Positions 16,590 to 38,934 of a stretch of 64,000 bases of DNA are shown in pieces; within the stretch, counting starts at the first letter, position 1; each line of letters opens with the position of its first letter. This DNA comes from Laetmonice hystrix (taxonomy: Eukaryota). Under the pieces are notes generated by a model. It did not search any database. It was not told the DNA's origin and saw only the letters and a program-made list of their open reading frames with translations. The DNA is taken from assembly GCA_965235115.1 (NCBI GenBank), contig OZ249452.1, positions 13,516,001 to 13,580,000 on the forward strand, in the 5' to 3' direction. Both the position numbers and the translations under genes were made by a program.

Positions 16590-18860
16590 ATCATTGTCAT
16601 CACCCGTAGGGCCCGGGTAACAATAGGCCCCATCATTTTCATCATCATTATCGTCATTATCATCACCCGTAGGGCCCGGGTAACAATAAGCCCCATCATT
16701 TTCATCATCAATATGTTCATTATCATCACCCGTGGGGCCCGGGTAACAATAGGCCTCATCATTTTCATCATCATTATCTTCGCCATCATCACCCGTAGGG
16801 CCCGGGTAACGAAAGGCCCCATCATTTTCATCATTCTATGGGGGGAGGCTGTAATCTCTTGTATCAGTATGTGGGTGGATCGGATGGCTATAAGGGGTGA
16901 TGAGGAGGCCATTTGATTAAACAGAATTGATGAAATATCGTGAATTGTCAGGGAATTTAAAACATCACCCGTGAGGCCCAGGTAACAATAGGCCCCATCA
17001 TTTTCATCATCATTATCTTCATTATCATCACCCGTGGGGCCCGGGTAACAATAGGCCCCATCATTTTCATCATTCTATGGGGGAGGCTGTAATCTCTTGT
17101 ATCAGTATGTGGGTGGATCGGATGGCTATAAGGGGTGATGAGGAGGCCATTTGATTAAACAGAATCAGGGAAATATGGTGAATTGTCAGGGAATTTAAAA
17201 CATCACCCGTGGGGCCCGGGTAACAATAGGCCCCATCATTTTCGCCATTGTATGGGGGAGGCTGTAATCTCTTGTATCAGTATGTGGGTGGATCGGATGG
17301 CTATAAGGGGTGATGAGGAGGCCATTTAGTTAAACAGAATCAGGGAAATATGGTGAATTGTCAGGGAATTTTAAACATCACCCGTAGGGCCCGGGTAACG
17401 ATAGGCCCCATCATTTTTATCATTCTATGGGGGAAGGCTGTAATCTCTTGTATCAGTATGTGGGTGGATCGGATGGCTATAAGGGGTGATGAGGAGGCCA
17501 TTTGATTAAACAGAATTAGGGAAATATGGTGAATTGTCAGGGAATTTAAAACATCACCCGTGGGGCCCGGGGAACAATAGGTCCCATCATTTTCATCATC
17601 GTTATCATTATCATCATCATCTAGGGGCTCAGGAAACGATAGGCCCCATCATTTTCATCATTCTATGGGGGGAGACTGTAGTCTCTTGTATCAGTATGTG
17701 GGTGGATCGGATGGCTATAAGGGGTGATGAGGAGGCCATTTGATTAAACAGAATCAGGGAAATATGGTGAATTGTCAGGGAATTTAAAACATCACCCGTG
17801 GGGCCCGGGTAACGATAGGCCCCATCATTTTCATCATCGTTATTATTATCATCATCATTTAATGGCCCAGGTAACGATAGGCCCCATCATTTTCATCATT
17901 ATCATTATTATCATCATTTAGGGGCCCAGGTAACGAAAGGCCCCATCATTTTCATCATTATCATTATGATCATCATCTAGGGGCCCAGGTAACGAAAGGC
18001 CCCATCATTTTCATCATTATCATTATGATCATCATCTAGGGGCCCAGGTAACGATAGGCCCCATCATTTTCATCGTTATTATTATTATCATCATCTAGGG
18101 GCCCAGGTAACGATAGGCCCATCATTTTCATCATCGACATCATTATCATCATCATCTAGGGGCCCAGGTAACGATAGGCCCATCATTTTCATCATCGCCA
18201 TCATTATCATCATCATTTAGGGGCCCGGGTAACGATAGACCCCATCATTTTCATCATTATCATTATTATCATCATTTAGGGGCCCAGGTAACGAAAGGCC
18301 CCATCATTTTCATCATTATCATTATGATCATCATCTAGGGGCCCAGGTAACGAAAGGCCCCATCATTTTCATCATTATCATTATGATCATCATCTAGGGG
18401 CCCAGGTAACGATAGGCCCCATTATTTTCATCATCGTTATCATTATCATCATCATCTAGGGGCTCAGGAAACGATAGGCCCCATCATTTTCATCGTTATC
18501 ATCATCATCATCATTTAGGGGCCCAGGTAACGATAGGCCCCATTATTTTCATCATCGTTATCATCGCCATCATCATTTAGGGGCCCAGGTAACGAAAGGC
18601 CCCATCATTTTCATCGTTATCATCATCATCATCATTTAGGGGCCCAGGTAACGATAGGTCCCATCATTGTCATCATCGTTATCATGATCATCATCATCTA
18701 GGGGCCCGGGTAACGATAGGCCCCATCATTTTCATCATCCTGTGGGGGGAGGTTGTAATCTCTTGTATATGTGGGTGGATCGGATGGCTATAAGGGGTGA
18801 TGAGGAGGCCATTTGATTAAACGGAATCAGGGAAATATGGTGAAATGTCGGGGAATTTAA
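16590..18860. repeat. Composite satellite: 59-63-bp hairpin units (GGGGCC-N12-GGCCCC plus an (ATC/ATT)n tract) interspersed with ~175-240-bp higher-order units
   Basis: About 4 hairpin units at 16600-16830 and ~15 at 17800-18735. Five larger units containing GTATCAGTATGTGGGTGGATCGG lie at 16830-17780, and a sixth variant at ~18740-18860. Confidence 0.9.
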
Positions 18861-19949: not shown

Positions 19950-21621
19950 GTGTTGCAGGTTGTGAAAGGAATTTAGTGTTAGAGTAAGGGCAGCAAGAGG
20001 TCAGGTGGGGAGTTCGGTGCTTAGTTTCAAATTTAGAGGGCTCTGAGTTATGTTTTAGTCGATTAGGGTATTGGTGGCTTAATTAGTGTCATCTTCATGA
20101 CTATTGACATTGACAGAATCATTTGAAAACGCAACATTCTAGCAATCAGATTTTAATAAAAATTAAGGCTTTCTTCTAGGATAATCTTTACAGATTTAAA
20201 AACCAGGAGGACCGCTTTTGCTAGATGCCCCCCCCCCTTGCTAGATGACCCCCTTGCTAGATGACCCCCCCCCCTCTTGATAGATGAGCCCTTTTGCTAG
20301 ATGACCCCTTTTGACGCCATCTCCAAAATCATGTAGGCCTATCAGTACTTGTACGAAACTGAACATAATTATGTACGCCCATATAATACGTTTACATGTA
20401 CATAGAACACAATATGGACAATAAATCGATACAATAACTGTGTTAAAGTCTGATATCTAGATAGATTTAATAAAAACATGTTTACAAAATTATGATGCAG
20501 TGGTATAATTATGAAAAACTAAAACTGCTTTTAATTATCGAATAAAGTTCTGTAACATCTTAAAAGTTTATTCACATTACCTAGTCATTCAAAACTTTTT
20601 TCAGGGGTAGGCCTAGTATTGTCTTAATCGAGAGATATTTATCATTCCGTCATTTCAGAGGAAAATCCTACGTCTCGAAGAGCTCTGTGTGTCGGTCTTG
20701 CGTACATAATTATATTTAGAAACGGTCAAAGGAAAGATTAATAATTGGTAGAGGTGTAACCAAATTAAAACGTGGCTCCAAATGTACAACATTCAGCTGG
20801 CCGTCCACCTGGCGGGAACAAATTGAAGCTTTATCCTATGAGATCTCTCCAGTTAACCCGGTGGGCGACAGGTGGCGCCCCAGGTAGGCCTGCGTGACGA
20901 GTTAATGTAATGGGGCTTACAGCACGTAGTACCTACGCATATATATTTTTTTAGATCTATTGAGGGAGGGCCATACACAATATTTCAAAGGAATGAAGGC
21001 CATTATTATGTTGTGTTTCCGACATTAAATAAAGGCCTATATTAAGTCAGTTCTCTTTAAAATGATGTCAGAGAGCGTGCATGCGTGTAGCCGTGTGTGG
21101 CTTTGTGATATAGCCTCAACGTTATAGACTGAAGTTGGAGAGAAACTGTGATGGTACCCCAGCTATAGACGTCCCTAACCTTGCACAGCACATTATAGAC
21201 GCCCGGAGGACCAGCTATATAAGCTAGACCTGGTAATAACATCGCTAAAACGGAAAGTCATCCAGTGTACATTTTACAGACAAATAAATCTATTTTATAC
21301 CGTATTTAATTCTTCATATCGTTTATCCTATGCCTAAAACTTTCCATTTCTGAAGGCTATACTCATTCGCCAATGCGAAAAAGGGGTGAAAAGGACAAAA
21401 TTATGATAGGCCATATAAATTTAATGAAAAAAAGGGGCCTCATAGGCCTATAGATAACCTTTTTCTTCTATTACTTTTTTCCCTTGCAATTTTTATAACG
21501 ATTTGCTCCAGTAGGCCTACAATCTATAGGCCTACTAGGCCTACCTTTCGCCCACACTTGCCTATAGGCCTAAGATATCGACCTATAGTAGGCCTATGCA
21601 TCCCTCATGTCATAAGTTTAA

Positions 21622-22159
21622 AGGGGCATATTATGAGGAAACGTGGAAAATCGGTATTTCAAAGAACTTTTGCTGTTTTCATCAAGAGGTCCTTCATTAA
21701 TATTGCTTGGTAAACAAAGACATCAGTTATCAGTTTCATTTTGCGTGAGAAATCGAAGTTTATGAAGCTCCCTTGCCCGCTTTTCTGCCGATTTCGTAAA
21801 ATATTTTTTGGGTGGCATTCTGATGCCGGACGATCGAGTGCAACTGCTGAATTGTTTACAACTAATCGAAGCACGTGACTAATCACATGCAGAGAGTGCA
21901 CACGCAGGATGTGACACAGTATGCAATTACACGGGTTGATGCGAGGTTGTCTATAGCAAATTATGGCGGGAGATGTGCTATCGGGAGAAATCTATAGGTT
22001 TAGTCGTAGGGCCTATAGAATCTACTTGTGCTGCATACGCAGCGAAAACACGTCGGAGGACAAAATGCTGTGGTAGGATTATTTACTTGGATCCCTAGTA
22101 CACGATCATGTTGGATAATTGCCGGAAATCTAAAAAAACGTGTTTCATAGCATGCCCCT
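21622..22159. mobile_element. Kolobok-like non-autonomous element, copy 2 (TTAA TSD)
   Basis: TTAA|AGGGGCATATTATGA...TCATAGCATGCCCCT|TTAA. Same orientation and internal sequence as 6375-6909. Confidence 0.8.
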
Positions 22160-22849
22160 TTAAATTAATAATTTCATTTGGAAAGTTCTTCTTCAAAGTG
22201 TTGGGGGCACAAATAGCCATAGATCTATTCAGACACAGCCAGAAGTGTAGGCCTAAGAAACCTAGACCAAAGATCAGGAGGCTTTGCCTAGACTTTTTTT
22301 TCTACCTGTCAACTCTGGAAAATGTCAGAAAGGGAGATTTTTTTTCGGAGGAACGAAACATGAATGTGCAACCCACTCTCGAGAGCGCGGTGCAGTTTCT
22401 TTTTCTTTAGTTCTTATTAATTAAATAATTACGTAATTAACTAATTAATTGATTTATTGCACAGTATGTAAAACAGTAAAAAAATCCAGCCAGAGTTTCA
22501 TCGAAGTTCATTATTTATTTGATCCTGTGGACCTGGTTATAGGCCTAGAAGTAAGTGGCACTCTTTGCAGTTTTGAGTTCATCTTTTGTAGGTTTGAAGT
22601 CACTGGCCTTACAATCTGAGTTGAGTTTGCAGCCAGTTCTCAGCGCCCAGGCACTCGTGAACTTTGATATTGGGATATTTTAAGTATGAATCGGGAGGTC
22701 GGGAAATAACTTTCCAAATTGGGAGACTCCCGACGATATCGGGAGAGTTGGCAGGTATCTATTCTAAGGCCCGCCCCCTCTATCCTCACAAGAATCTCAT
22801 TCATAGGTCTTTGATCCCATGCAGCTGAGTTTGGGCGCGACACAGAAAT

Positions 22850-23240
22850 AGTCCTGGGCGGGTATTAATCTCCTCTCCATTGTTGGCTGAGGTAAACAGT
22901 ACTTCCGGCGACGTTGTCAAGGTGACACAGATCATGACGGACTCTACGTCATGGTTTAATTCATTCTCTAACGTCTAATACGGGATTCAGAAGACATTCC
23001 TTTAATATTTCTTCTCTAAAAAAACAATCTTTGCTTCCAACAGGACTACACGAATCTTTTTTGATGTGCAGTTGGAAGAACTACATAAAACTGTGGCGTA
23101 ACATTATGACGTTGCTTAGCGTAACGCGTCATTCTCGCTGGAGACATTCAGCCGTAAACATCGATCGAGCAATCGTCCGTGTTTATATTCGAGAAAATCT
23201 TGTGAATTCACCGGAATGGCAAGTTTTCCTGTGGTAAGTA
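22850..23240. promoter_or_regulatory. CpG-rich putative promoter and probable non-coding first exon ending at donor 23233/23234
   Basis: CpG-enriched patch with ACTTCCGG (ETS-like), X-box-like GTTGCTTAGCGTAAC and a consensus donor CTGTG|GTAAGT, ~1.9 kb upstream of the first coding exon of the repeat-protein gene. Confidence 0.35.
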
Positions 23241-25119
23241 TTGTCCATGAATATTCCGTTATCCTATATATTTATATGAATATTGTTTATTTCGAGATTA
23301 ATTGTAATTATTCGCAATTTCACAATCCAACCCAACCCAGCGCGCAACCCCGGCCCAACCCCCCGACTTTCTTGCAGTGGATAAGGCCTAGACTCTAGAC
23401 TCTACTGAGACTTTACAGCGTCAGATTTTAGTTTTATTTCAAAACTTCAATCAACAAATGAAAGAATAGCCCAAAGTTCAAAGCATAGCAGTCGACATTT
23501 TCATCACAATCTGAATCATTTCGGGAACTTTGGAACAGTTGGAACTTTGCCAAGCCCAAGTCTTGGGGCGAGTTGGGCTTGGGTGGATCGGGCCCATTCG
23601 GCTAACCTCGGGAGTGTTCGGGAAATTCCGAGTAGCGAAGCGGAAACGGAAGTCGAGGTGTCTGCTCCAATCGGAACTTCCGAGGCCATTTCCGGTTTAG
23701 AAATTAAACCCGAGTCCGAGATGTTGGCTAGCCCTCTCGTCTCGGCTAGGCATGGGCCTCTCATCGGCTGGTTGATTACAGCAGCGATCAGAGGTTCTTC
23801 TATTAAGCCTAAGCAAAGCTTATGTAGAACTTTATGACTTAAAATCTGATGGAAATGGAGATAGTGAAAAAAAGAAGAATTAGAATAGAATTAAGTTTGG
23901 CCTGGGCTGGGGGCCCAACAAAAAAATGTTTGCTCCTGAACTGAAGAAAAAACCAATCTCTCTCAGGGAATGAGAAAAAACATACATAGCCCCCCCCCCC
24001 CTTCCCATGAAGGGGGACCCCCATCCCACCCACCCCCACCACCATCGAATGCCTAGAAAGGCCAAAGGTACCAGGAAATTAGGCCTTCCTCGGTCCCCCG
24101 GGCCCCCACCTAGCTTGAAATAGCCAGACGCCCCGATTCTCTCCCAGGGTTCACCGCGCCGGGGGGGGGGGGGGGGGGCGCTGATTTCAAGCGCGATTGA
24201 GCGGCCTCCTGAACAAAAAGAAAAAGATGGGGGAAAATTAAATATAGAACCCCCCCCCCCCCAAAAAAAAAAATAAATAAATAAAATTATTAAAAAAAAA
24301 AAAAAAAAAAGCTCTAGACCAACCTGCGACTGGGCAAGTTAAATAAGAGTACGCTAATATACAATATACTAAGATACCACTATTAATATCAGTCTTCAGT
24401 CATTATTCTGCTATTCAGGGGTGTGTCCCTCATCTATCGTTATCATGTCGTGCGTTAAAATCCCCACTGAAAATACATTGGAGTTAACGATACGACAAGC
24501 TAACGACATGATGAGGAACACCCCCCCTGCGGAGTCTGCGTCAGATCGAAGGATGGGGGGGGGGGGGGTGCTACACTAAAGCGAGTGATAAACGTCGGTT
24601 GATTTCCCTCTACTCTTAGACTTATCTCTGGAGATTAGACTTTAGTTACTTCATCGTCTTAGCACTGAAGCAGGTTGAGGCGCTGAACATTTGTTAAGCC
24701 TACTTATACCACCTACTATAAGCCTATCAATGATCAAATTCAATGTGTCTAGATAACTTTACTAATTCTCTTCAACAAATTCAAGCCTTGAAAAAAAGTC
24801 TGGATTATATTGCCCTCACGCAGTTTATAATCAAATCCAAACACCATTTTTTTCAGCTCAGACTAGTTGAAGATTCCTTGTACATCATCATGTCAATTTG
24901 ATCTTGATTTTGAAACAAATGAATCTGTCCAATTTAGTTCTTTGTGTGCATCCTTTCTCCCGTTCAGGTTTGTGGTCGAATTTTAACATTTCCAGGTACA
25001 AGTACTCTGGTAGAATATAGTTTTTCAAATCATTTTAAAGAGAATTTTTGATATTTAAAGACTTTTTTTTTCAGACTACAAAGTCGTTTCCGAACTCTGG
25101 AGTGAGCGTCAAAGACACC

Positions 25120-28100
25120 ATGAGGTCTGCAGGAGACATCTGGGATTTGATGCGGAGAACGGACCGCCGACATGCAGGGGTGAAAAGGTCCCCAAGCAGT
25201 AAAAGTGCGGTGAGAGAATGGGCTCCTACCAAAGCTACAAAACCTCACAGACGGAGGGAGCTTTATGAGGAGAAGATTAGAAAGGCACAGCTTCATAAGC
25301 AGCGCGGGTTGGACCAAAGGAGGAAGGCTGAGCTTTGCCAGAGGCGCAAGGAAACGAGGAAGATGGAAGCAGTGCTAAAAAAACTCCGCAAGAAAGCAAA
25401 GAAAAGTGAAGGAAAGAAGTCGAGTGTCTTTTGTAAGTACTTAAATTTATTTATTTTGTTGGTTGCCATGATCTCAGTCACTAATGTTTATTTTACAGAC
25501 CATACTTTTAAACTTTACACCAAAGAAAGAAAAAGGAAATATTTTTTAGTATGTATTGTTATTGTATAAAAAAGCTTAGCAACATTGTAATGTTCCTTTG
25601 CTTTCATTTATGCTCGTAGGCGAAGGCCCACTAGATGTCAGAGAGTCTTTAAAATCTAGTAAGATAAACAGTTAAAATAATGTTGGCATTTTTAGGTTTC
25701 TGCAAACCCTTCTGTTCTAAGTCAAAGAGAGATCAAATTGCATCTATTTGTGTCTGCATGCACTGATTGGTCCTATCAGTCTGAGAGTGTGTGTGGTGAA
25801 TGCATATACATGTTTGTATTCTATTTACCCGGTACATATCTATGAGTGTGTGGTGATATAGTTGATGATGTGTAAGGAACTGTCAATCTCTGTTTCATCT
25901 GGCTGTGTGTAGATGAGGAGGCTGACTTCTCACTAAGTACAAAGTGGTGTTTAGTTGCATGCAAGCCTCAGAAAATGGTGCATTTCATGACGTGTGTGAG
26001 ACATATTATAGTTGTTTTTATTTGACGAAGTTCACAGTCTTTTAATAATCTGCTACAGTTGATAAATTGTTCTTCCACACAGAAACAAAAATCGTTTTCA
26101 GGGGTGACCGTATAAAGAAATGATGTCGTCTAAAATAATGAAGATCCTGCAACAGAGGTGACTCTTTCTGATGGTAGTATTGAGGTTGTTTATGATCTTG
26201 GTTGATGTTTGTTAACAGAAATAACAGAAACTTTCTCTAATCTGTCATTCTTCTCCCCTTAGCATTACTTCATTTTGGTGTTGTTATTTTGTGTGTCATA
26301 AGAGGGTGAATTACTGCATGATTTGTTTAAGTTGTTGAATTAACCAAAGTACTTACAACAGCTGTTTCTACTTTTACTTTTAAATTTACAGTTTAAACTA
26401 ATTAAGGAAATCTTATGAAAATAGTAAACCTGTGCTTTAATGCAGTATACTAACTCAATTATTTGTAAGGTGTCGGGTAGAAATCCAATTGATTAAATCA
26501 ATCGATACCATACACGATTCAATGTAGACTAGTAGAGAATGTAAATTATTACTCATTTTCTTAAATATATTTCTGTGAGCCCAACACGGGGTGCGCACCC
26601 CAGTACTCCCCCCCCCCCCCCCGATAGCTATGTTTCTGTTCGTCGTTATCGATGTTTGAAATGGCAACTGAATAGGATGCTGCCATGTATCATTTAAACT
26701 CTGAACTAGAATTGACGTGATTTAGTTCTAAGTCAAAATGATAGATGGCAGCACCATTTACCGTCCCATCTAGCGGGAATTATGGAACTAATGATGGATC
26801 ACCGGCAGCGCCGTAAAACTTTGTTTCGGGTTGGGGCTTCAAACGTTCATAGCGACGAAAGAAATAATGATTATCGCGTGTCAAGAGGGAGCTAAGAAGT
26901 CAAAGGTTGAAATGATAATTGGATTTCATGCAGATTCTAAGTCAATTGTCAAAAGAATCGCGTTGAAGGTATGTTGTTGATGTAAAATAATTTTAGCTTC
27001 AAGGTTTCATAAAAGTGCCGCCAGTAGGCGCTGGTGTGTAGTGACCGTTCCGAGAATTGATGACACGTTGGTGCTGTGGGCGGCGTAGGGGGCATACATC
27101 GCCCATGATAACTTAAAACCAACGAAATTTGGTCGAAAGTAAAGATCCATAGCCCTGACCTTATCCCTAACCCTGGTCCCTACACTTCCCAGAAACATAT
27201 CCCTAAGGCTATCCTATCCCTATTAGCATTTCTACAGGCATGTGACTTCAGGTAATTGGTCAGAAATGAAAAAAAAAAACAAAAAAAAAAACAGCCTGCT
27301 TGGCATTTTTGCTGGGAAAATACATGTATCTAAATTGCACTTTACTCTAAGAAAAAGAACATTTTGGGTGATTGTCCTGCTTGTAGAAGGAGCTTGGATT
27401 GTCAACTACAAGTCACGGGTCCTATTTTAGCAATGTTAGAGGCCCGTGACTTCAGATAATTGTACAGAAATATAAAAAATACCAGCCTGCTATGTGCTAG
27501 CCATTTGTGTGTAAAATATGTCTAATATGTCAGTATTTGGGTCATCATTGACTTTTACAACTTCAAGTCTCGATCCTGATTTTAGAAATTAGTAGACCGA
27601 AAGTAAAATAGGAAATTTCAGTCAAATCATGCAAAGTCTGGCATTGCATCGTTTCAGCCCTACTTCCTGGAGACCACAAACAATACTATGGAACCTCAAT
27701 TTACAGAACGTTTTAAGTCTTGGCTAATGGCGTTTTATTCCAGAAAGAGCCTCGACTGACACTTCTTGCCTCTAAATTGTATTTACTTGTATTACTTGTC
27801 CCCAATCTACACAAGTTTCGCAAAAGTACCTTGGTATATAAACTGATAATAACCTCTCCCAAGGTAGCTTACGGTTGCTCTCCCTTTATTACAGGTTTCA
27901 ACTGTATCTATTTCGGATCACGATCCAGAAGCCCAGCTTCTGAGTACCGAGCTATGGTCAAGCGGTATCTCATGTCAGAGCCAAGTTCTCTGGATACTGC
28001 CACCATGTCCGATTTCTCCTCATTTGGAGATACAGACGTTATGTCAGAGATCTCCACAACCGGAGGAGAAACACTCTCAAGTTCCTTCAGAAGCATTGAG

Positions 28101-31100
28101 GTAAAGGCAGTAACTACCTTTATATTTTATTCTCCTATCAATGTGGCATAGTCCTGTTGACAAGTATTGGGCCAGTGTGACGTTTACATCTCACCTTGAG
28201 TCTCCTAGGCTAATGGCAACTTAATTATAGCGTTGGATTATCTTGTACATGATGAATAAATATTCATCCTCAAAGCACTCAGAAAATTTACACGATTCCT
28301 TTACTTGTCAGGATGAGGTAGACATAAAGCCGGAAAACTGGTGCAGGCAAACTACCTACCCTTGGCCTCAAATCCGATCTAAAGAGGTAAGTCTGGAGTG
28401 CTAGTCATTCTTCTTAGTAATCTTTTTTTTCTCTTTCTTTATGCCAGTGCTTATCATTCTGTTTCTAGTGTTTCACTCTCTCTATAGGATTCAAAGGAGC
28501 TCTAATACCAATAGGAAAACGCCAAAATTAACCCACCAAGACTTGAATATCAATGAAATATCCTTTAAAAATATTCATGGAAATTTAAGCTAATATTATT
28601 TTTCACTTTGTGTGATACTTTATTAAAGGGTCATTACGAGGCACACCAAGTCATCCCGAGGCCCACTTCACACAGAGCAACACCTACTGAACTGGGCAGT
28701 AGCGAGGTTAATATTTTTGTTTATCTTCATGATTATATCATTCATTGTTTCCAATGGAAACCAATCACTGTTTAGGGGATTTTGAAGGCAGACTTAATGG
28801 AAAACGTCAAAGGTTCTGAAATAAAAGGTTCCTTATTGAAATATCGTTCGATCATTGCCACACTATGTCAAATTAATCCTCTAAGCTAATGTCAACTTAA
28901 TGATAGGGTGGAATTAGGTTGTACATGATGAATAAATATTCATCCTCAAAGCACTCAGAAAATTTACACGTTTCCTTTACTTGTCAGGATGAGGTAGACA
29001 TAAAGCCGGAAAGGCCACATAGCGGTCGCAGGCAAACTACCTACCGTCGGTTGAAAACCCCATCCAAAGAGGTAAGTCAGGAGTGCTAGTCATTCTTAGT
29101 AATCTTTTTTTTTCTCTTTCTTCATGCCAGTGCTTACCATTCTGTTTCTAGTGGCAGGGTTGTTTCATTCTATTTATAGGATTCAAAAGAGGTCTAATAG
29201 GAAAACGCCAAAATCAACCAGCTAAGACTTGAATATCAATGAAACATCCTTTTTAAAAATATTCATGGACATTTAACCTAATATTATTTTTCGCTATGCG
29301 TGATACTTTATTAAAGGATCGTTACGAGGCACACCAAGCCATCCCAAGGCCTACTTCACACAGGGCAACACCTACTGAACTGGGCAGCAGCGAGGTTAAT
29401 ATTTTTGTTTATCTTCATGATTATATCATTCATTGTTTCCAATGGAAACCAATACTGTTTGCGGGATTTTGAAGGGCAGACTTAATGGAAAATGTCAAAG
29501 GTTCTGAAATGAAAGGTTCCTTATAAGTTATTGAAATATCGTTCGATCATCGCCACATTGTTTCAAATTAATCAATAAAAGTTTTTTTTATTTCTTACCT
29601 TGTACAATATCTTTACTTAAAGGATGACTCCGAGGCAGAACAGATGCCCCAAACCATCCCAAGGAAGATACCATGCAAAGAGAAAGCAACTGATGTTGGC
29701 AAGCAGCATGAGTACAAGGTTGCCATCTCTGCAAGTAGTCCTACCCACAAGACAGAGGTTGCCCATCCACGTGCAAAGAGGGCAGATAAATCTCCAAATG
29801 ATCGTCGCAAGAAACAATCATGCCAGAGTACACAATCTGTACTGATGAAAGAGCGGTCAACTCCAAAAGATGGTGAGCAGAAACCACGTGCGTTACCGCC
29901 TGATATGCAAAAGAAAATGAAAGAATTGAGATATGACTTGGAAATTGAGTCAGATTTATGTATTGCAAGGGTTAATGCCATAAGCCAGCTTGCCATGGAG
30001 CGAGCAGAAAAGAGGTTGAATGGCTGTGAGCTTCCCGAATTTAGGTACCCTTTCTTCAAAGGGTACCCTTTCCATCAGAAGGCAAAGTCCGAGAGAATGG
30101 TGAGGCTTTCGATAGAGTCAGACTTGAAAGAACAGGTCATTGCAGATCAAATCAGAAATCACCAAGACATGCCATATAGCTGTAGACATGAAAGAGAAAA
30201 CGAGAGAAAGTGTGATTTGTTTGATGATGAAAGGATTTGCCCAGGCTGTAGACAACGAAGAGAGAATATCTCGAATTGTAGAGTACCAAAAAAGTCACAG
30301 AGAAAAGTTGCCAAAAAATCTTGCATCGAGTTGAACAATAGCTGTGACACAAATATGGATGCATCAGGTACCAGTACTGTAGAAATGTCAAATGAGGACC
30401 AGGTAAAAATAATGTTGACAGAGAAGTCTAACAATGTTAAAAAAGAGTCAATTACTCATTATGCAGAGGTATGTGAAGTCACGATGAACAATGAATCCGT
30501 TCTGAAAATGAACGATGTGTTAGAGATGAGGATTGAGGAGACAACAGTTATGGGGCCTAACTTAGAGGTTGCGGTTAAAGCAGAATGCCAGATGATAAAT
30601 CAATCTGAGATCATAGAAGTTAAAGAAAAGGTAGAAGACGATCTACCAGAGAAGGAAAGTGAAAGCATTCCAGAATGTTCTGATATAAAGGTTGCAGAGG
30701 AGTGTGACTTGAAAGTAAATGACAAGCCAGAGCCAGATGCAAAGGTTCCAAAAGAGAACAAGGTTCCAGAGTGGTTCCTGGAATTTGCACCAGAGAAATC
30801 AAAAGCTATGCCAGAGGATGATGATAAGAGCGTCCAGGGGAAGTCAGAAAAAGACGTCATTAGTAAGTCAGATGAAACTGTCTTACAAGATGCAACAGCT
30901 TCAGAGAAGGATATGTGTCCAAAATGGTTTGTTGACTTTATTCCGATAAAACCAGCAGTAGCCGCTTCGGAGAAGGTTGAACAAAAGTCAGTAAGCGGGT
31001 TAGATATAAGCCTGATAGAGTATCTTGACCCGAGCACGAAGAAAAGAAATAGAGTAAGCAGAGATACTCTAGAACGTTCAGAGGTTTCACTTGTTGAAGA

Positions 31101-34100
31101 AAAAGAAATAACCTGTCCACATAGAGGTTCGTGTATGTTTGACTTATTCGCTGATGTTCAAAAGAAGGTGGAGCAGAGGGCCTCAAGGAGGGCTGGTATG
31201 AGTATAAAAGATTATCTTGATGAACAAATGCCAGAAAAAACAGAAGAGAAAGTGTCAGAGAAAGTTGAGCGTAGACCTCCAAGGAGGGCTGGTATGAGTA
31301 TAAAAGATTATCTTGATGAACAAATGCCAGAAAAAACAGAAGAGAAAGTGTCAGAGAAAGTTGAGCGTAGACCTCCAAGGAGGGCTGGTATGAGTATAAA
31401 AGATTATCTTGATGAACAGATGCCAGAAAAAACAGAAGAGAAAGTGTCAGAGAAAGTTGAACGTAGACCTCCAAGGAGGGCTGGTATGAGTATAAAAGAT
31501 TATCTTGATGAACAGATGCCAGAAAAAACAGAAGAGAAAGTGTCAGAGAAAGTTGAACGTAGACCTCCAAGGAGGGCTGGTATGAGTATAAAAGATTATA
31601 TTGATGAACAGATGCCAGAAAAAACAGAAGAGAAAGTGTCAGAGAAAGTTGAACGTAGACCCCCAAGGAGGGCTGGTATGAGTATAAAAGATTATCTTGA
31701 TGAACAGATGCCAGAAAAAACAGAAGAGAAAGTGTCAGAGAAAGTTGAACGTAGAGCTCCAAGGAGGGCTGGTATGAGTATAAAAGATTATCTTGATGAA
31801 CAGATGCCAGAAAAAACAGAAGAGAAAGTGTCAGAGAAAGTTGAACGTAGACCTCCAAGGAGGGCTGGTATGAGTATAAAAGATTATCTTGATGAACAGA
31901 TGCCAGAAAAAACAGAAGAGAAAGTGTCAGAGAAAGTTGAACGTAGAGCTCCAAGGAGGGCTGGTATGAGTATAAAAGATTATCTTGATGAACAGACGCC
32001 AGAAAAAACAGAAGAGAAAGTGTCAGAGAAAGTTGAACGTAGAGCCCCAAGGAGGGCTGGTATGAGTATAAAAGATTATCTTGATGAACAGACGCCAGAA
32101 AAAACAGAAGAGAAAGTGTCAGAGAAAGTTGAACGTAGAGCCCCAAGGAGGGCTGGTATGAGTATAAAAGATTATCTTGATGAACAGACGCCAGAAAAAA
32201 CAGAAGAGAAAGTGTCAGAGAAAGTTGAACGTAGAGCCCCAAGGAGGGCTGGTATGAGTATAAAAGATTATCTTGATGAACAGATGCCAGAAGAAACAGA
32301 AGAGAAAGTGTCAGAGAAAGTTGAACGTAGAGCCCCAAGGAGGGCTGGTATGAGTATAAAAGATTATCTTGATGAACAGATGCCAGAAGAAACAGAAGAG
32401 AAAGTGTCAGAGAAAGTTGAACGTAGAGCCCCAAGGAGGGCTGGTATGAGTATAAAAGATTATCTTGATGAACAGATGCCAGAAGAAACAGAAGAGAAAG
32501 TGTCAGAGAAAGTTGAACGTAGACCTCCAAGGAGGGCTGGTATGAGTATAAAAGATTACATTGATGAGCCAGTGCTAGAAAAACCAGTTTCAGGGAAGGT
32601 TGAGTGCAGAGCCCCAAGGAGGACAGGATTGCGTGCAATAAATTGCATTGATGAACCGGTGCAAGAAACCCCGGTTTTGGAGAAAGTTGAGGGCAGAGCC
32701 CCAAGACGGACAGGTTTGCGTGCACAAGACAACATTGATGAACCGGCGCCAGAGAAACCAGTTCCAGGGAAAGTCGAGGGCAGAGCCCCAAGAAGGACGG
32801 GATTGCGTGCAAAAGACTTCATTTATGAACCAGTCCTTGAAAAACCAGTTTCGGAGAAAGTTGAGGGCAGAGCCCCAAGAAGGACAGGTTTGCGTGCGCA
32901 AGACAACATTGATGAACCGGCGCCAGAGAAACCAGCTTCAGGGAAAGTCGAGGGCAGAGCCCCAAGAAGGACGGGATTGCGTGCAAAAGACTACATTGAA
33001 AAACCAGTCTTAGAAAAACCAGTTTCAGAGAAAGTTGAGGGCAGAGCCCCAAGAAGGACGGGATTGCGTGCAAAAGACTACATTGAAGAACCAGTCTTAG
33101 AAAAACCAGTTTCAGAGGAAGTTGAGGGCAGAGCCCCAAGAAGGACAGGTTTGCGTGCAAAAGACTACATTGATGAGCCAGCACTAGAAACCCCAGTTTC
33201 AGAGGAAGTTGAGGGCAGAGCCCCAAGAAGGACAGGTTTGCGTGCAAAAGACTACATTGATGAGCCAGCACTAGAAACCCCAGTTTCAGAGGAAGTTGAG
33301 GGCAGAGCCCCAAGAAGGACGGGAATGCGTGCAAAAGACTACATTGATGAGCCAGCACTAGAAAACCCAGTTTCAGAGAAAGTTGAGGGCAGAGCCCCAA
33401 GATGGACGGGATTGCGTGCAAAAGACTACATTGATGAGCCAGCACTAGAAACCCCAGTTTCAGAGGAAGTTGAGGGCAGAGCCCCAAGAAGGACGGGAAT
33501 GCGTGCAAAAGACTACATTGATGAGCCAGCACTAGAAAACCCAGTTTCAGAGAAAGTTGAGGGCAGAGCCCCTAGAAGGACGGGAATGCGTGCAAAAGAC
33601 TACATTGATGAGCCAGCACTAGAAAACCCAGTTTCAGAGAAAGTTGAGGGCAGAGCCCCTAGAAGGACGGGAATGCGTGCAAAAGACTACATTGATGAGC
33701 CAGCACTAGAAACCCCAGTTTCAGAGGAAGTTGAGGGCAGAGCCCCAAGAAGGACGGGAATGCATGCAAAAGACCAAATTGATGAGCCAGCACTAGAAAA
33801 CCCAGTTTCAGAGAAAGTTGAGGGCAGAGCCCCTAGAAGGACGGGAATGCGTGCAAAAGACTACATTGATGAGCCAGCACTAGAAAACCCAGTTTCAGAG
33901 AAAGTTGAGGGCAGAGCCCCAAGAAGAACGGGAATGCGTGCAAAAGACAACATTGATGAACCGGTGCTAGAAAAAGCATCTGTAACTCTCTCAGGAAACA
34001 TTGACCATAAACTGCCAAGGAGTGAAAATGTGGGTACACCTGGTTTCGTTGAAGAACAGGTTGTAAAGGTGCTGAATAATCCAAACATGAATGAAAAGAT

Positions 34101-36849
34101 ATCTGAAAAACCAACTGTAACTGTATCAGAACAAAACAGACAACCTAATTGGTTCACAGAATTGAGGTCAGAGCAACCGCTGGTCACATCTTCAGAGAAA
34201 GAGACATGTCCTAACAGGTATACAGAGATGGGGCCAAAACTGATACAGGTGAAAGCTGCAGAAATCTCATACACAAATGTGGTGAAGCCAGGTGAAGAGG
34301 CTTCTAAGGAGAATCAACATCCAACTTGGTTTGCAGGAAAGCAAGGTTCAAATGATGGTGAAAGGTCAGAAACAAGGGCTATGGAAACGTGCAGTATGAA
34401 GGCGGAAAAAGATCCAGGTGCAAAGTTCTCTGAGAAAGACTGCCGTTCTGTCCAGTGTTCAGGTTTGGTAACAGATCAGCCAGATGTAACAGTCTCTGAG
34501 AGAAATACACGTCCTGGTTGGTTTACAGATTTCGTACCCGACAAGCCAAATGTGGAGGAAAAATTGGATGTAAGTGTTGCAGCAAAGACAGCTGTGGTAA
34601 AGAACTCAGATGTGAACGTTTCTGCAAATGATCTGGTGCCAGAAAATAGTGGTGCGGCACCACGTCCTACCTGGTTTACATTGTTTGCATCTAAGAAGCC
34701 AAATGTTGAAGAAAGGTTGGATGAGAGTGTTGCGACAAAGACAAATGTGACAAAGAACTCAGATGTGAACGTTTCTGCAAATGATCTGGTGCCAGGAAAT
34801 AGTGGTGCGGCACCACGTCCTACCTGGTTTACATTGTTTGCATCTAAGAAGCCAAATGTTGAAGAGAAGTTGGATGTGAGTGTTGCAGCAAAGACAGAGG
34901 TGGTAAAGAACTCAGATGTAAAGGTTTCTGCAAATGATCTGGTGCCACAAAACAGTGATGATGCAGTTACAAAGAAAAAATCACGTCCTAGCTGGTTTAC
35001 AAAATTCTTACCTGAGAAGCAAAATGTTGAAGAGAAGTTGGATTTGAGTGTTACAGCAAAGATAGATGTGAATGTTTCTGCAAATGATCTGGTGCCAGAA
35101 AATAGTGGTGTGGCAGGTACAAAGAAAAAATCACGTCCTAGCTGGTTTACACAATTCTTACCTGAGAAGCAAAATGTTGAAGAACAATTGGATGTGAGTG
35201 TTACAGCGAAGACAGAGGTGGTAAAGAACTCAGATGTAAAGGTTTCTGCAAATGATCTGGTGCCAGAAAATAGTGGTGTGGTGGTTACAAAGAAATTCAG
35301 GCCCCGTCCTAGCTGGTTTGTAGCGTTAACACCTGAGAAGCCAAATGTGGAAAAAAGGTTGGATGAGAGTGTTGCGACAAAGACAGAGGTGGTTAAGAAC
35401 TCAGATGGGAAGGTTTCTGCCAATGATCTGGTGCCACAAAACAGTGATGTGGTGGTTACAAAGAAAAAATCACGTCCTAGCTGGTTTAAAGCGTTTGTAC
35501 CCGAGAAGCAAAATGTTGAAGAAAGGTTGGATGAGAGTGTTGCGACAAAGACAGATGTAACGAACAACTCAGATGTAAAGGTTTCTGCAAATGATCTGGT
35601 GCCACAAAACAGTGATGTGGTGGTTACAAAGAAAAAATCACGTCCTAGCTGGTTTAAAGCATTTGCACCCGAGAAGCAAAATGATGAAGAACGGTTGGAT
35701 GAGAGTGTTGCGACAAAGACAGATGTAACGAAGAACCCAGATGTAAAGGTTTCTGCAAATGATCTGGTGCCACAAAACAGTGATGTGGTGGTTACAAAGA
35801 AAAAATCACGCCCTAGCTGGTTTAAAGCATTTGCACCCGAGAAGCAAAATGTCGAAGAACATTCGGATGAAAGTGTTGCGACAAAGACAGATGTAACAAA
35901 GAACTCAGATGTAAAGGTTTCTGCAAATGATCTGGTGCTACAAAACAGTGATGTGGTGGTTACAAAGAAAAAATCACGTCCTAGCTGGTTTAAAGCATTT
36001 GCACCCGAGAAGCAAAATGTTGAAGAACGGTTGGATGAGAGTGTTGCGACAAAGACAGGTGTAACGAAGAACTCAGATGTAAAGGTTTCTACAAATGATC
36101 TGGTGCCACAAAACAGTGATGTGACGGTTACAAAGAAAAAATCACGTCCTAGCTGGTTTAAAGCATTTGCACCCGAGAAGCAAAATGTTGAAGAACGGTT
36201 GGATGAGAGTGTTGCGACAAAGACAGGTGTAACGAAGAACTCAGATGTAAAGGTTTCTACAAATGATCTGGTGCCACAAAACAGTGATGTGACGGTTACA
36301 AAGAAAAAATCACGTCCTAGCTGGTTTAAAGCATTTGCACCCGAGAAGCAAAATGTTGAAGAATGGTTGGATGAGAGTGTTGCGACAAAGACTGATGTAA
36401 CAAAGAACTCAGATGTAAAGGTTTCTGCAAATGATCTGGTGCTACAAAACAGTGAGGTGGTGGTTACAAAGAAAAAATCACGTCCTAGCTGGTTTAAAGA
36501 ATTTGCACCTGAGAAGCCAACTGTTGAAGAAAAATTGGATGCGAGTGTTGAAACTAAGACAGAGGTGATAGAATGTTCAGATGTTACAATTTGTGTGAAC
36601 GATCTGGTGCTAGAAAATGTTGATGCGGTGGTTACAAAGAAAAGCGCACATCCTAGCTGGTTCACAGCTTTTGCACCTGAGAAGCCAAATGTTGAAGAAA
36701 GGTTAGATGTCAGTGTTGCGACAAAGAACTCAGATGTGAATGTCTCTGCAAATGATCTGGTGCCACATAACAGTGGTGTGGCGGTTACAAAGAAAAAATC
36801 ACGTCCTAGCTGGTTTAAAGCGTTTGCACATGAGAAGCAAAATGTTTAA
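25120..36849 (+). CDS. Uncharacterised ~2,630-aa Lys/Glu/Arg-rich tandem-repeat protein (5 coding exons)
   Basis: Exons 25120-25432 (ATG; acceptor at 25075), 27895-28100, 28312-28386, 28988-29071 and 29623-36849. All are GT-AG and phase-consistent (1,0,0,0). The last exon contains the 2401-aa ORF. AATAAA at 37166-37171. No recognisable catalytic domain. Confidence 0.8.
28200..29575 (+). repeat. ~680-bp tandem duplication containing paralogous exons 3 and 4
   Basis: Blocks ~28200-28880 and ~28880-29575 align in intron and exon sequence (DEVDIKPE...RQTTY...SKE in both). Confidence 0.85.
29623..36849 (+). CDS. 7.2-kb terminal coding exon of the repeat-protein gene
   Basis: Uninterrupted frame from acceptor TTAAAG|GATGAC to TAA. 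Repeat unit lengths of 96, 87 and 168 bp all preserve frame. Confidence 0.92.
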   Translation, partial: DDSEAEQMPQTIPRKIPCKEKATDVGKQHEYKVAISASSPTHKTEVAHPRAKRADKSPNDRRKKQSCQSTQSVLMKERSTPKDGEQKPRALPPDMQKKMKELRYDLEIESDLCIARVNAISQLAMERAEKRLNGCELPEFRYPFFKGYPFHQKAKSERMVRLSIESDLKEQVIADQIRNHQDMPYSCRHERENERKCDLFDDERICPGCRQRRENISNCRVPKKSQRKVAKKSCIELNNSCDTNMDASGTSTVEMSNEDQVKIMLTEKSNNVKKESITHYAEVCEVTMNNESVLKMNDVLEMRIEETTVMGPNLEVAVKAECQMINQSEIIEVKEKVEDDLPEKESESIPECSDIKVAEECDLKVNDKPEPDAKVPKENKVPEWFLEFAPEKSKAMPEDDDKSVQGKSEKDVISKSDETVLQDATASEKDMCPKWFVDFIPIKPAVAASEKVEQKSVSGLDISLIEYLDPSTKKRNRVSRDTLERSEVSLVEEKEITCPHRGSCMFDLFADVQKKVEQRASRRAGMSIKDYLDEQMPEKTEEKVSEKVERRPPRRAGMSIKDYLDEQMPEKTEEKVSEKVERRPPRRAGMSIKDYLDEQMPEKTEEKVSEKVERRPPRRAGMSIKDYLDEQMPEKTEEKVSEKVERRPPRRAGMSIKDYIDEQMPEKTEEKVSEKVERRPPRRAGMSIKDYLDEQMPEKTEEKVSEKVERRAPRRAGMSIKDYLDEQMPEKTEEKVSEKVERRPPRRAGMSIKDYLDEQMPEKTEEKVSEKVERRAPRRAGMSIKDYLDEQTPEKTEEKVSEKVERRAPRRAGMSIKDYLDEQTPEKTEEKVSEKVERRAPRRAGMSIKDYLDEQTPEKTEEKVSEKVERRAPRRAGMSIKDYLDEQMPEETEEKVSEKVERRAPRRAGMSIKDYLDEQMPEETEEKVSEKVERRAPRRAGMSIKDYLDEQMPEETEEKVSEKVERRPPRRAGMSIKDYIDEPVLEKPVSGKVECRAPRRTGLRAINCIDEPVQETPVLEKVEGRAPRRTGLRAQDNIDEPAPEKPVPGKVEGRAPRRTGLRAKDFIYEPVLEKPVSEKVEGRAPRRTGLRAQDNIDEPAPEKPASGKVEGRAPRRTGLRAKDYIEKPVLEKPVSEKVEGRAPRRTGLRAKDYIEEPVLEKPVSEEVEGRAPRRTGLRAKDYIDEPALETPVSEEVEGRAPRRTGLRAKDYIDEPALETPVSEEVEGRAPRRTGMRAKDYIDEPALENPVSEKVEGRAPRWTGLRAKDYIDEPALETPVSEEVEGRAPRRTGMRAKDYIDEPALENPVSEKVEGRAPRRTGMRAKDYIDEPALENPVSEKVEGRAPRRTGMRAKDYIDEPALETPVSEEVEGRAPRRTGMHAKDQIDEPALENPVSEKVEGRAPRRTGMRAKDYIDEPALENPVSEKVEGRAPRRTGMRAKDNIDEPVLEKASVTLSGNIDHKLPRSENVGTPGFVEEQVVKVLNNPNMNEKISEKPTVTVSEQNRQPNWFTELRSEQPLVTSSEKETCPNRYTEMGPKLIQVKAAEISYTNVVKPGEEASKENQHPTWFAGKQGSNDGERSETRAMETCSMKAEKDPGAKFSEKDCRSVQCSGLVTDQPDVTVSERNTRPGWFTDFVPDKPNVEEKLDVSVAAKTAVVKNSDVNVSANDLVPENSGAAPRPTWFTLFASKKPNVEERLDESVATKTNVTKNSDVNVSANDLVPGNSGAAPRPTWFTLFASKKPNVEEKLDVSVAAKTEVVKNSDVKVSANDLVPQNSDDAVTKKKSRPSWFTKFLPEKQNVEEKLDLSVTAKIDVNVSANDLVPENSGVAGTKKKSRPSWFTQFLPEKQNVEEQLDVSVTAKTEVVKNSDVKVSANDLVPENSGVVVTKKFRPRPSWFVALTPEKPNVEKRLDESVATKTEVVKNSDGKVSANDLVPQNSDVVVTKKKSRPSWFKAFVPEKQNVEERLDESVATKTDVTNNSDVKVSANDLVPQNSDVVVTKKKSRPSWFKAFAPEKQNDEERLDESVATKTDVTKNPDVKVSANDLVPQNSDVVVTKKKSRPSWFKAFAPEKQNVEEHSDESVATKTDVTKNSDVKVSANDLVLQNSDVVVTKKKSRPSWFKAFAPEKQNVEERLDESVATKTGVTKNSDVKVSTNDLVPQNSDVTVTKKKSRPSWFKAFAPEKQNVEERLDESVATKTGVTKNSDVKVSTNDLVPQNSDVTVTKKKSRPSWFKAFAPEKQNVEEWLDESVATKTDVTKNSDVKVSANDLVLQNSEVVVTKKKSRPSWFKEFAPEKPTVEEKLDASVETKTEVIECSDVTICVNDLVLENVDAVVTKKSAHPSWFTAFAPEKPNVEERLDVSVATKNSDVNVSANDLVPHNSGVAVTKKKSRPSWFKAFAHEKQNV
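31186..32560 (+). repeat. Coding 96-bp (32-aa) tandem repeat, RRAGMSIKDYLDEQMPEKTEEKVSEKVERR(P/A)P
   Basis: 15 near-identical RRAGMSIKDY starts at a 96-bp period. Confidence 0.95.
32561..33960 (+). repeat. Coding 87-bp (29-aa) tandem repeat, RRTG(L/M)RAKDYIDEPALE(T/N)PVSE(E/K)VEGRAP
   Basis: 16 R(R/W)TG starts at an 87-bp period. Confidence 0.95.
34510..36846 (+). repeat. Coding ~168-bp (56-aa) tandem repeat, RPSWFKAFAPEKQNVEERLDESVATKTDVTKNSDVKVSANDLVPQNSDVVVTKKKS
   Basis: 15 P-x-W-F motifs; the core copies are spaced exactly 168 bp apart. Confidence 0.95.
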
Positions 36850-37579
36850 CTGCCCAGATGTTGCTGGGGGCTATCCAAGGATAGCAAGATGTCGAACTGA
36901 TGACAGTTCGTATTATTGTATTGCATTATATAATCTATTGTTATATTATATATGTATATTATATTGTGTTATATATTGTTATGTTATATGTACATTATAT
37001 CGTGTTATAGTTCATTCAATATCATGCAAACTTCCATGGATAACTTTCATTAACAAAATACCGAATCGAGTATCCGTAATTCGGGGTACCGTACGATCAT
37101 GAGCAATTGTATCAGACGCCGCAAAGGAATGAGCAATTGTATCAGACGCCGCAAAGGAATCATGAAATAAACCAATGATATCAAAATTACACAATACTGT
37201 ATTGGCGTTTATTTATTTTATATAATTCCTCCACCCCCACCCCCACCCCCGAATCAATCCAGTACCCTTATGGCCTCATAGAGAACGTTTCAAGCACCGT
37301 AACAGCATCTTCATATCCTATAACAACAACAGCAACATACTGCAGATTTTTTTGGAGTTTTAATCATTTTCCTGGCCTCGGAACCTGAAATAGAAGTCAG
37401 GTGACCTCCACTATATAATAGACTACCTATGCCATAAAATCGGCAGAAATTCCCTAGAAATGACTTTAAAAGGCAAGCCTGTCTTTTTCCCACGCCCTCC
37501 TCCAATCAGTTTGCGTGAGAACGATACTCTAATCCACTTTAGGCCCCACAAAGTATACATCCCATAATTCTCAATCACT

Positions 37580-38901: not shown

Positions 38902-38934
<33 letters not shown>

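What the first reader, a model, noticed from the sequence alone, without database searches (positions are those of the whole stretch)
25120..36849. Unrecognised ~2,630-aa modular repeat protein with a 7.2-kb terminal exon
Seen: a basic, coiled-coil-like N-terminus, a Cys-containing segment (ICPGCRQRRENISNC), then 15x32-aa, 16x29-aa and ~14x56-aa tandem arrays. About 5.2 kb of repeat is kept in frame without a stop, unlike the frameshifted satellites nearby, which argues for selection on the protein. I recognise no domain. Inference: a lineage-specific, largely disordered multivalent scaffold. Its position next to a WDR87/97-family gene (sperm-associated in mammals) makes a sperm or flagellar role a testable guess.
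Basis: partly seen in the sequence, partly recalled or inferred. Interest (0 to 1): 0.8.

Follow-up and report, generated by a model that had tools for sequence, protein, structure and literature searches.

The report
Orphan giant repeat-protein gene, five paralogs
This is a real, spliced and transcribed animal gene for a roughly 2,690-residue, apparently unfolded protein made mostly of three in-frame tandem repeat arrays; it has no detectable relative outside this genome but four intact sister copies on other chromosomes, and its function is still unknown.

Summary
A 7,206-nt open frame (29644-36849, +) carries three in-frame tandem arrays with units of 96, 87 and 168 nt. RNA-type contigs from one public run join it by GT..AG splices to upstream exons starting at 25120. 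This gives a 7-exon, 2,686-aa model, or 2,632 aa if one exon pair is skipped.

New here: the gene is one of five paralogs on four chromosomes. Each sits in a duplicated unit of about 16.5 kb that holds only this gene. All five keep every splice site and an open frame of about 2,150-2,690 aa.

Selection on the reading frame is clear. All 36 gaps found in four pairwise alignments of the last exon between paralogs are multiples of 3, whereas 85% of intron gaps are not. Within the arrays pN/pS is 0.4-0.6 in frame and 0.7-1.2 out of frame. Amino-acid constraint is weak (dN/dS 0.55-1.35).

No Pfam domain, PDB relative or homolog among 1.84 billion representative proteins was found. AlphaFold2 gives pLDDT 35-46.

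The best reading is a young, fast-evolving, disordered polyampholyte that presents repeated short motifs such as KKKSRPSWF. The sperm or flagellar idea has no support: the WD40 neighbour lies outside the duplicated unit, and the 60-kb flanks fetched for two paralogs hold no trace of it.

The parts
21014..37490 (+). Extent of the segment shared with the four paralogous loci (gene plus about 4 kb upstream and about 0.6 kb downstream)
   Evidence: blastn of the window against paralog regions. The upstream edge is nearly the same in three copies.
25120..25432 (+). First coding exon found (basic, helix-prone, about 104 aa); the exon probably begins near 25077
   Evidence: ATG in a good context and a GT donor at 25433. 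X4 joint 25432>27895. Five genomic copies at 93-94%. Upstream acceptor-like site.
27895..28100 (+). Exon 2 (Ser/Thr/Asp-rich)
   Evidence: X4 joint and contig 27895-28076. AG/GT sites are kept in all paralogs.
28312..28386 (+). Exon a1 of the a/b exon-pair module
   Evidence: X4 joints 28386>28629 and 28386>29317; splice sites.
28629..28706 (+). Exon b1
   Evidence: X4 joint into 28629. The 'goes back' joint 29394>28988 is best read as b1>a2 placed on the near-identical duplicate.
28988..29071 (+). Exon a2
29317..29394 (+). Exon b2
   Evidence: X4 joints 28386>29317 and 29394>29623
28203..29573 (+). Two genomic tandem copies of a ~680-bp unit, each holding one a exon, one b exon and their intron; 2-4 copies in the paralogs
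   Evidence: blastn self-offsets; exon mapping in paralogs.
29623..36849 (+). Last exon, coding part (2,408 codons plus stop)
   Evidence: AG acceptor at 29621-29622 with an X4 joint; ORF.
29644..30492 (+). Non-repeat region shared by all five paralogs (283 aa; two predicted helices; cluster of invariant Cys)
   Evidence: alignments; AF2 pLDDT 34.9; dN/dS 0.55-1.35.
30493..31183 (+). Acidic segment specific to this copy, holding two degenerate PxWF motifs
   Evidence: Single copy in the genome. An exact X4 RNA contig covers 30454-30999.
31184..32587 (+). 96-nt (32-aa) array, about 14.6 units, 98% alike, found only in this copy
32499..33974 (+). 87-nt (29-aa) array, about 16-17 units (PRRTGLRAKDYIDEP...)
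   Evidence: shared with all paralogs.
33975..34507 (+). Inter-array segment with degenerate PxWF units; part of it (34137-34589) occurs twice in each paralog
34508..36846 (+). 168-nt (56-aa) array, about 13 units, conserved cores RPSWF and SANDLV
36850..37190 (+). Probable 3' UTR with AATAAA at 37166
   Evidence: homology with paralogs ends near 37490.

Best explanation
A genuine, transcribed, multi-exon protein-coding gene. It is the most divergent of five recently duplicated paralogs and encodes a ~305-kDa intracellular protein of very low predicted structure.

Shown: the exon structure and splicing; five intact copies; selection that keeps the frame and the motif cores while amino-acid sequence and repeat number drift quickly; no known domain and no homolog outside this genome in the libraries searched.

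Inferred: the protein has a basic, helix-prone N-terminus followed by net-neutral polyampholyte repeat units. Each unit has a basic head, in the 56-aa units a basic-aromatic head (KKKSRPSWFKAF), and an acidic or neutral tail. It would act as a long flexible multivalent scaffold that presents 14-30 copies of short linear motifs to one or a few partners. The most likely partner is an acidic surface (membrane phospholipid, tubulin tails or nucleic acid) or a motif-binding domain. Valency would be tuned by array expansion and contraction. The specific partner is a guess.
For: ORF and arrays.

Splicing: GT..AG joints appear only in run X4, whose contigs lie on exons and not introns. One exact contig covers the copy-specific segment 30454-30999. 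The joined model stays in frame.

Five copies with 93-94% nucleotide identity, both in the first coding exon and at the start of the last exon. All AG/GT sites and frames are kept, and the models have no internal stop.

Frame selection: introns carry 14-28 gaps per kb, 85% of them not multiples of 3. The 850-nt non-repeat coding part has 0 gaps, or 2 that compensate each other. All 36 gaps in four pairwise alignments of whole last exons are multiples of 3. Within arrays pN/pS is 0.38-0.62 in frame against 0.73-1.17 in the other two frames.

The repeat families occur only inside the five gene copies.

No family match: Pfam, PDB (54), 1.84e9 representative proteins (26), word-indexed searches of both array regions (39, 59), Atlas (40).

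Disorder: GRAVY -1.0, fraction of charged residues 0.33-0.50, net-neutral units. AF2 mean pLDDT is 34.9 for the non-repeat part (48). It is 46.1 for three 56-aa units with a 28-row alignment, and confidence rises only over the KKKSRPSWFKAF motifs (60). RPxWF and SANDLV are the invariant columns across 28 three-unit segments.
Against: dN/dS between paralogs is near 1 (0.55-1.35), so amino-acid constraint is weak.

RNA support comes from one small run of one sample, its record does not say RNA, and it is held only as contigs. Some joints may come from paralogs (95-99% identity class). There is no protein-level evidence.

The libraries searched may hold few close relatives of this animal, so 'no homolog' does not prove the gene is lineage-restricted.

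Low pLDDT with shallow alignments is weak evidence of disorder.

The 5' end is open, so an upstream coding exon cannot be excluded.

Nothing tested here identifies a binding partner.
Confidence: 0.7

Rival explanations
1. The gene family is transcribed but nearly neutral. In a genome that readily makes tandem arrays, coding minisatellites expanded inside a young gene. The arrays would be tolerated passengers with no motif-based function, and only the short non-repeat part, or nothing, would matter.
For: dN/dS is about 1 in the non-repeat part. The four younger copies differ by only dS 0.02-0.03. The 96-nt array is 98% homogeneous and present in one copy only. Repeat number and architecture differ freely between copies. 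Earlier notes from this scan describe tandem arrays all over this genome.
Against: Stops or frameshifts in a last exon would not trigger nonsense-mediated decay. Neutral arrays should therefore break, yet every one of 36 gaps is in frame against 15% in introns. This includes length changes in slippage-prone poly-Lys (A-rich) runs. In-frame pN/pS is below the out-of-frame controls. Motif cores are invariant across 28 segments.
Confidence: 0.18
2. It is a sperm, flagellar or other germline-specific protein. Its fast evolution would be driven by reproductive selection.
For: There is only indirect support: rapid evolution, recent gene-family expansion, and a WD40-repeat gene downstream of this copy.
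Against: The neighbour lies outside the duplicated unit, and the 60-kb flanks of the two paralogs examined hold no trace of its exons. No tissue-resolved RNA is available. The neighbour's identity as WDR87/97 was not established.
Confidence: 0.08
3. It is a secreted or structural material protein (adhesive, matrix or mucin-like) whose signal-peptide exon lies upstream and was missed.
For: An acceptor-like site 43 nt upstream of the ATG, with an open frame behind it, is conserved in three copies. The large VNTR-type exon resembles mucin gene architecture.
Against: The first coding exon found is strongly basic and helix-prone (pI 10.4). The repeats are Lys/Glu/Arg/Asp-rich, not Pro/Thr/Ser-rich. 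No Cys-rich or extracellular domains were found.
Confidence: 0.04

Closest known systems
AHNAK / periaxin-type giant-exon repeat proteins (comparison from general knowledge, not tested by alignment)
   Same: Most of a very large protein is encoded by one giant exon. It consists of tens of tandem units rich in Lys, Asp and Val with short conserved basic-hydrophobic cores. There is no signal peptide, and a flexible scaffold role is proposed.
   Different: No PDZ domain is found by Pfam. Unit lengths are 29, 32 and 56 aa, not ~128. No sequence similarity could be shown, because AHNAK-sized proteins fell outside the length range of the word-indexed searches.
Ki-67 (MKI67)
   Same: A single ~7-kb exon carries a tandem array. 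The protein is highly charged and disordered with basic regions, and it acts through bulk physical properties rather than a fold.
   Different: Pfam finds no FHA domain and no Ki-67 repeat. There are three unrelated arrays instead of one. The gene is present as five young paralogs.
Titin PEVK / PPAK 28-residue modules
   Same: The 29-32-aa units are rich in Pro, Glu, Val and Lys, and a disordered spring-like chain is plausible.
   Different: There is no match to the PPAK model or any titin domain, and no Ig/Fn3 context. The resemblance is compositional only.
MARCKS-type basic-aromatic effector segments (analogy for mechanism only, from general knowledge)
   Same: Short clusters of Lys/Arg are interspersed with Trp/Phe and Ser (KKKSRPSWFKAF; up to about 10-12 Lys in the paralogs). 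This is the composition that binds acidic lipid surfaces electrostatically.
   Different: There is no homology and no myristoylation signal. The motif is repeated about 14-19 times per protein. Binding was not tested.
Cornifin / SPRR (Pfam PF02389)
   Same: A 480-aa stretch of the 32-aa array scores 54.9 bits against a cut-off of 34.8. Both are Pro/Glu/Lys/Val-rich repeats.
   Different: The score is a sum of eight weak matches on near-identical units. Two units alone give no Cornifin hit, and the copy-specific segment gives 19.5 bits, below the cut-off. Thirteen unrelated families 'match' the same stretch in the same way.

Membership tests
Cornifin/SPRR (PF02389) | A match to the family model that does not depend on summing repeats | tested here: not met
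   54.9 bits over 8 stretches on 15 near-identical units. There is no hit on two isolated units, and 19.5 bits (cut-off 34.8) on the copy-specific segment.
Ki-67 | N-terminal FHA domain and Ki-67 (K167R) repeats | tested here: not met
   Pfam scans of all exons and arrays list neither.
AHNAK/periaxin | N-terminal PDZ domain | tested here: not met
   No PDZ in Pfam scans of exons 1 and 2, a1, b1 and the last exon. An undetected upstream exon remains possible.
AHNAK/periaxin | Sequence similarity of the central repeat units | not testable with these tools
   No AHNAK sequence was available by reference. The word-indexed searches only admit proteins of 1,320-4,200 aa.
Titin PEVK | PPAK-motif match and flanking Ig/Fn3 domains | tested here: not met
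   Neither appears in the Pfam scans.
Mucins / secreted VNTR proteins | Signal peptide and Pro/Thr/Ser-rich repeats | tested here: not met
   The N-terminus found is basic and hydrophilic. The most frequent residues in the repeat units include Glu, Arg, Lys, Pro and Val. The signal peptide was judged by eye only, and the 5' end is not settled.
   This protein has no WD40. The WD40 exons lie at 42.4-47.5 kb, outside the duplicated unit, and are absent from the flanks of two paralogs.
Transposable-element or viral ORF | Transposase, integrase, reverse-transcriptase or capsid domains; high copy number; terminal repeats shared by all copies | tested here: not met
   No such Pfam domains. There are exactly five copies. 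MITE-like flanks occur at the C30 copy only.

The most novel reading that the evidence does not exclude
This would be a very young gene family caught in the act of being built from coding minisatellites. A short non-repeat core acquired arrays of a basic-aromatic motif, then spread as a gene-sized ~16.5-kb unit to four chromosomes. It is now diversifying by array gain, loss and replacement: a new 32-aa array and a unique 230-aa segment in this copy, 2-4 copies of an exon-pair module, and higher-order repeats in the others. Selection would act only on frame and motif cores. The product would be a new class of multivalent electrostatic tether for membranes, microtubules or nucleic acids.
Probability: 0.15. 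Interest if true: 0.6.

Novelty: new member of a known kind. Interest (0 to 1): 0.4.

Why it matters
Large disordered repeat proteins without homologs are common in animal genomes but are rarely backed by evidence that they are real genes. This case has that evidence: spliced RNA, five intact paralogs, and a clean contrast between all-in-frame indels in the exon and mostly out-of-frame indels in the introns. It therefore offers a tractable natural series. The five copies have different numbers and kinds of the same motif arrays, which can be used to study how repeat valency evolves and what such motifs bind. It also shows that in this satellite-rich genome some tandem arrays are under protein-level selection. 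It does not yet bear on any long-standing question, because the function is unknown.

Tried and rejected
1. Pfam hits on whole arrays (VitD-bind_III, NTP_transf_4, Cornifin, LRRCT and others) are rejected as repeat-summation artefacts after per-unit scans.

2. The two marginal hits of the exhaustive protein search (P0001, P0002; E about 1e-4) are themselves repeat or out-of-frame-looking sequences that match low-complexity stretches. P0003 (E 6e-6, 23% identity) carries bacterial surface-repeat domains and looks compositional.

3. The protein-language-model search (Atlas) gave no usable hit.

4. The AlphaFold2 models were too poor (pLDDT 35 and 46) to justify fold searches, so none were run.

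5. A transposon-based explanation for the dispersal was considered. The C30 copy is flanked by two direct copies of a ~440-bp MITE-like element. That element has at least 18 copies elsewhere and none at the other four loci, so it is not a general mechanism. The C29b copy is flanked on both sides by one satellite.

Their first coding exon is known only from a match in the genome search.

7. Motif strings searched in the literature gave only chance hits, and a general search gave nothing specific.

8. The scan's earlier notes hold nothing for this place or for WDR87.

9. The second sequencing-run search found only the same four runs of one sample, so other individuals or species could not be examined.

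Full report
OBSERVATION. The window holds an uninterrupted + strand open frame from 29644 to 36849 (2,401 codons from the first ATG). Tandem Repeats Finder reports three arrays inside it. They are 31184-32587 (96-nt unit, 14.6 copies, 98% matches), 32499-33974 (87 nt, 17 copies, 89%) and 34508-36846 (168 nt, about 11-13 copies, 84-87%). All unit lengths are multiples of three, and the three arrays and the unique stretches between them share one frame. The strand is purine-rich (GC skew +0.2 to +0.3, AT skew +0.2 to +0.4). Long antisense frames of up to 729 aa also stay open, so openness alone is not proof of coding. Further tests were therefore made.

GENE MODEL AND RNA. Four public runs of one sample hold the sequence. 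Contigs of X1-X3 cover introns and exons alike and show no joints, as DNA would. Run X4 is ten times smaller. Its contigs lie on the proposed exons and hardly on the introns, and it alone shows GT..AG joints: 25432>27895, 28386>28629, 28386>29317 and 29394>29623. It also shows one 'goes back' joint, 29394>28988. The window carries two tandem copies of a ~680-bp unit (28203-29573), and each holds an 'a' exon and a 'b' exon. The backward joint is therefore best read as b1>a2 placed on the near-identical b2. I read the exact splice sites from the sequence. Joining 25120-25432, 27895-28100, 28312-28386, 28629-28706, 28988-29071, 29317-29394 and 29623-36849 gives 8,061 nt with no internal stop, or 2,686 aa. 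An X4 contig matches 30454-30999 exactly. That segment is single-copy in the genome, so this copy itself is transcribed. An AATAAA lies at 37166. The 5' end is open. A polypyrimidine tract followed by AG lies 43 nt upstream of the ATG and is conserved in three copies, with no stop between it and the ATG. X4 has no contig there.

A FIVE-COPY FAMILY. A search of the whole assembly (627 Mb, 35 contigs) finds exactly five copies, both of the start of the last exon and of the first coding exon. They are this one (C29:13.54 Mb) and others at C29:7.00 Mb, C30:4.92 Mb, C2:32.90 Mb and C19:15.92 Mb, at 93-94% nucleotide identity. The homology covers window ~21014-37490 only. The 60 kb fetched around each of the C29b and C30 copies shares nothing else with the window. 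In all four other copies every AG/GT site is kept. Exons 1 and 2 together stay in frame (519 nt here, 510 nt in the two copies for which exon 1 was fetched). The a/b exon pair (84 + 78 nt) is present 2, 3, 3 or 4 times. The assembled models have no internal stop: 2,244 aa and 2,156 aa, plus two lacking only the unfetched exon 1. The four other copies are close to each other (dS 0.02-0.03), and this copy is the outlier (dS about 0.075). It alone has a 230-aa acidic segment and the 32-aa array, neither found elsewhere in the genome. It also has a C-terminus about 70 aa longer. The others pass directly from the shared 283-aa region into the 29-aa array. They also carry a higher-order repeat that includes the 34137-34589 segment twice.

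IS THE PROTEIN UNDER SELECTION? Amino-acid constraint is weak: dN/dS is 0.55-1.35 in the 283 shared codons. Frame constraint is strong. Between paralogs the introns carry 83 gaps in 5.8 kb (C29b vs C30) and 144 gaps in 5.1 kb (C29b vs this copy), and 85% of them are not multiples of three. The 850-nt non-repeat coding part has none, or two that compensate each other. In four pairwise alignments of whole last exons, all 36 gaps are multiples of three. These include length changes in A-rich poly-Lys runs. Because these are last exons, nonsense-mediated decay cannot explain why they stay open. Within the arrays of this copy, pN/pS between units is 0.55, 0.38 and 0.62 in the annotated frame. In the two other frames it is 0.73-0.89, 0.92-1.17 and 0.91-1.14. 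Across 28 three-unit segments from all five copies the invariant columns are the cores RPxWF and NDLV with a few flanking residues. The repeat units occur nowhere in the genome except in these five genes, so they are not copies of a general satellite.

WHAT IT IS NOT. Pfam gives nothing above cut-off for any exon or single unit. The many 'hits' on whole arrays, including Cornifin above its cut-off, are sums of weak matches over near-identical units. An exhaustive HMMER search used the first 520 residues of the last exon against 1.84 billion representative proteins. It gave two junk repeat hits at E about 1e-4. Word-indexed searches with both array regions gave none, or one compositional hit. 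PDB sequences gave none, and the Atlas feature search gave none. The query's own protein is absent from these libraries, so close relatives of this animal may be missing too. 'Lineage-restricted' is therefore likely but not proven.

WHAT IT LOOKS LIKE. The product would be about 305 kDa with GRAVY -1.0 and pI 7.1, and no hydrophobic segment is evident. The first exon is basic (pI 10.4 for exons 1-2) and rich in Arg/Lys/Glu heptad-like stretches. AlphaFold2 on the 283-aa shared region, with five sequences, gives mean pLDDT 34.9 with two long helices (86-126, 148-174) and no fold. On three 56-aa units with 28 aligned segments it gives 46.1 and no secondary structure, and confidence rises to 52-67 only over the KKKSRPSWFKAF motifs. 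Each repeat unit is net-neutral, with a basic head and an acidic or neutral tail. The fraction of charged residues is 0.33-0.50. The PxWF motif occurs 19 times, including degenerate copies in the copy-specific and inter-array segments.

MECHANISM. Shown: the gene is real and spliced, it has five intact copies, and selection preserves frame and motif cores while the rest drifts. Inferred: it is a long disordered polyampholyte that displays many copies of short motifs, in other words a multivalent scaffold or tether. From composition alone, the basic-aromatic heads suggest binding to an acidic surface (membrane lipids, tubulin tails or nucleic acid), and the Ser residues inside them could act as phospho-switches. 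I give the general reading about 0.7 and any specific partner no more than 0.2. The main rival is a transcribed but functionally near-neutral family of coding minisatellites (about 0.18). It fits the weak dN/dS and the free turnover of arrays, but not the complete absence of frame-breaking indels.

Downstream on the + strand there are WD40-type exons (42448-42633, 43027-43269; below threshold because the exons are short) and a HEAT-like exon (55364-55582). I could not confirm WDR87/97 specifically. These exons lie outside the duplicated unit and leave no tblastn trace near the C29b and C30 paralogs. Adjacency is therefore incidental to this one copy, and no tissue data exist. The guess remains untested, not refuted.

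COMPARISON AND NOVELTY. In architecture the gene resembles giant-exon repeat proteins such as AHNAK and Ki-67, and in composition the PEVK-type modules of titin. It fails every testable membership criterion for them (see the membership table). It is a new family within a familiar class, the fast-evolving tandem-repeat disordered proteins. Earlier notes of this scan describe tandem arrays throughout this genome, which fits the origin of these arrays but was not tested here. Interest is moderate. The evolutionary evidence is unusually clean, and the five-copy series is a useful natural experiment, but nothing yet points to a function.

Noticed in passing
window 39094-39163 (+), with an A-run at 38903-38937: A tRNA-Glu(TTC)-like sequence (Rfam tRNA 38.8 bits; also found by ARAGORN) lies in the intergenic space after the gene. 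It could be a true tRNA gene or a tRNA-derived SINE head.
   Followed up: no
window 26600-27200 (intron 1 of the gene): A very high-copy element. Summed contig depth in the DNA runs reaches 70,000-120,000, against about 100-300 around it, and many loose ends begin or end at 26998, 27095 and 27173.
   Followed up: no
L019:5389-5836 and L017:4943-5387 (C30 paralog flanks): Two direct copies (95% alike) of a ~440-bp MITE-like element bracket the C30 paralog about 20 kb apart. The element has ~50-bp inverted termini and at least 18 other genomic copies at 94-97% identity. It is absent from the other four loci.
   Followed up: partly
C29:7.0 Mb paralog flanks (L010-L015): The C29b copy lies between two blocks of one tandem satellite (offsets suggest a unit of about 52 bp), as if inserted into or bordered by that array. 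A 5.7-kb insertion also splits its downstream homology with the C30 copy.
   Followed up: partly
window 1992-2722: This stretch matches, at 92-93%, the sequence that lies immediately upstream of the duplicated unit at the C29b paralog. In the window it lies 18 kb upstream of the unit's edge. It could be a dispersed element, or a remnant of a longer ancestral unit split by later insertions.
   Followed up: no
window 40354-58907 (+): A downstream multi-exon gene with WD40-type exons (42448-42633, 43027-43269, 46130-46393, 47316-47510) and a HEAT-like exon (55364-55582). Its family was not determined.
   Followed up: partly
There is also an (MMKMMGPIVTRALRV)n-like periodic ORF at 16481-16912 (-).
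   Followed up: no
window 37099-37160: An exact 30-nt x2 tandem duplication in the probable 3' UTR just before the AATAAA. The same sequence is present at the paralogs.
   Followed up: no
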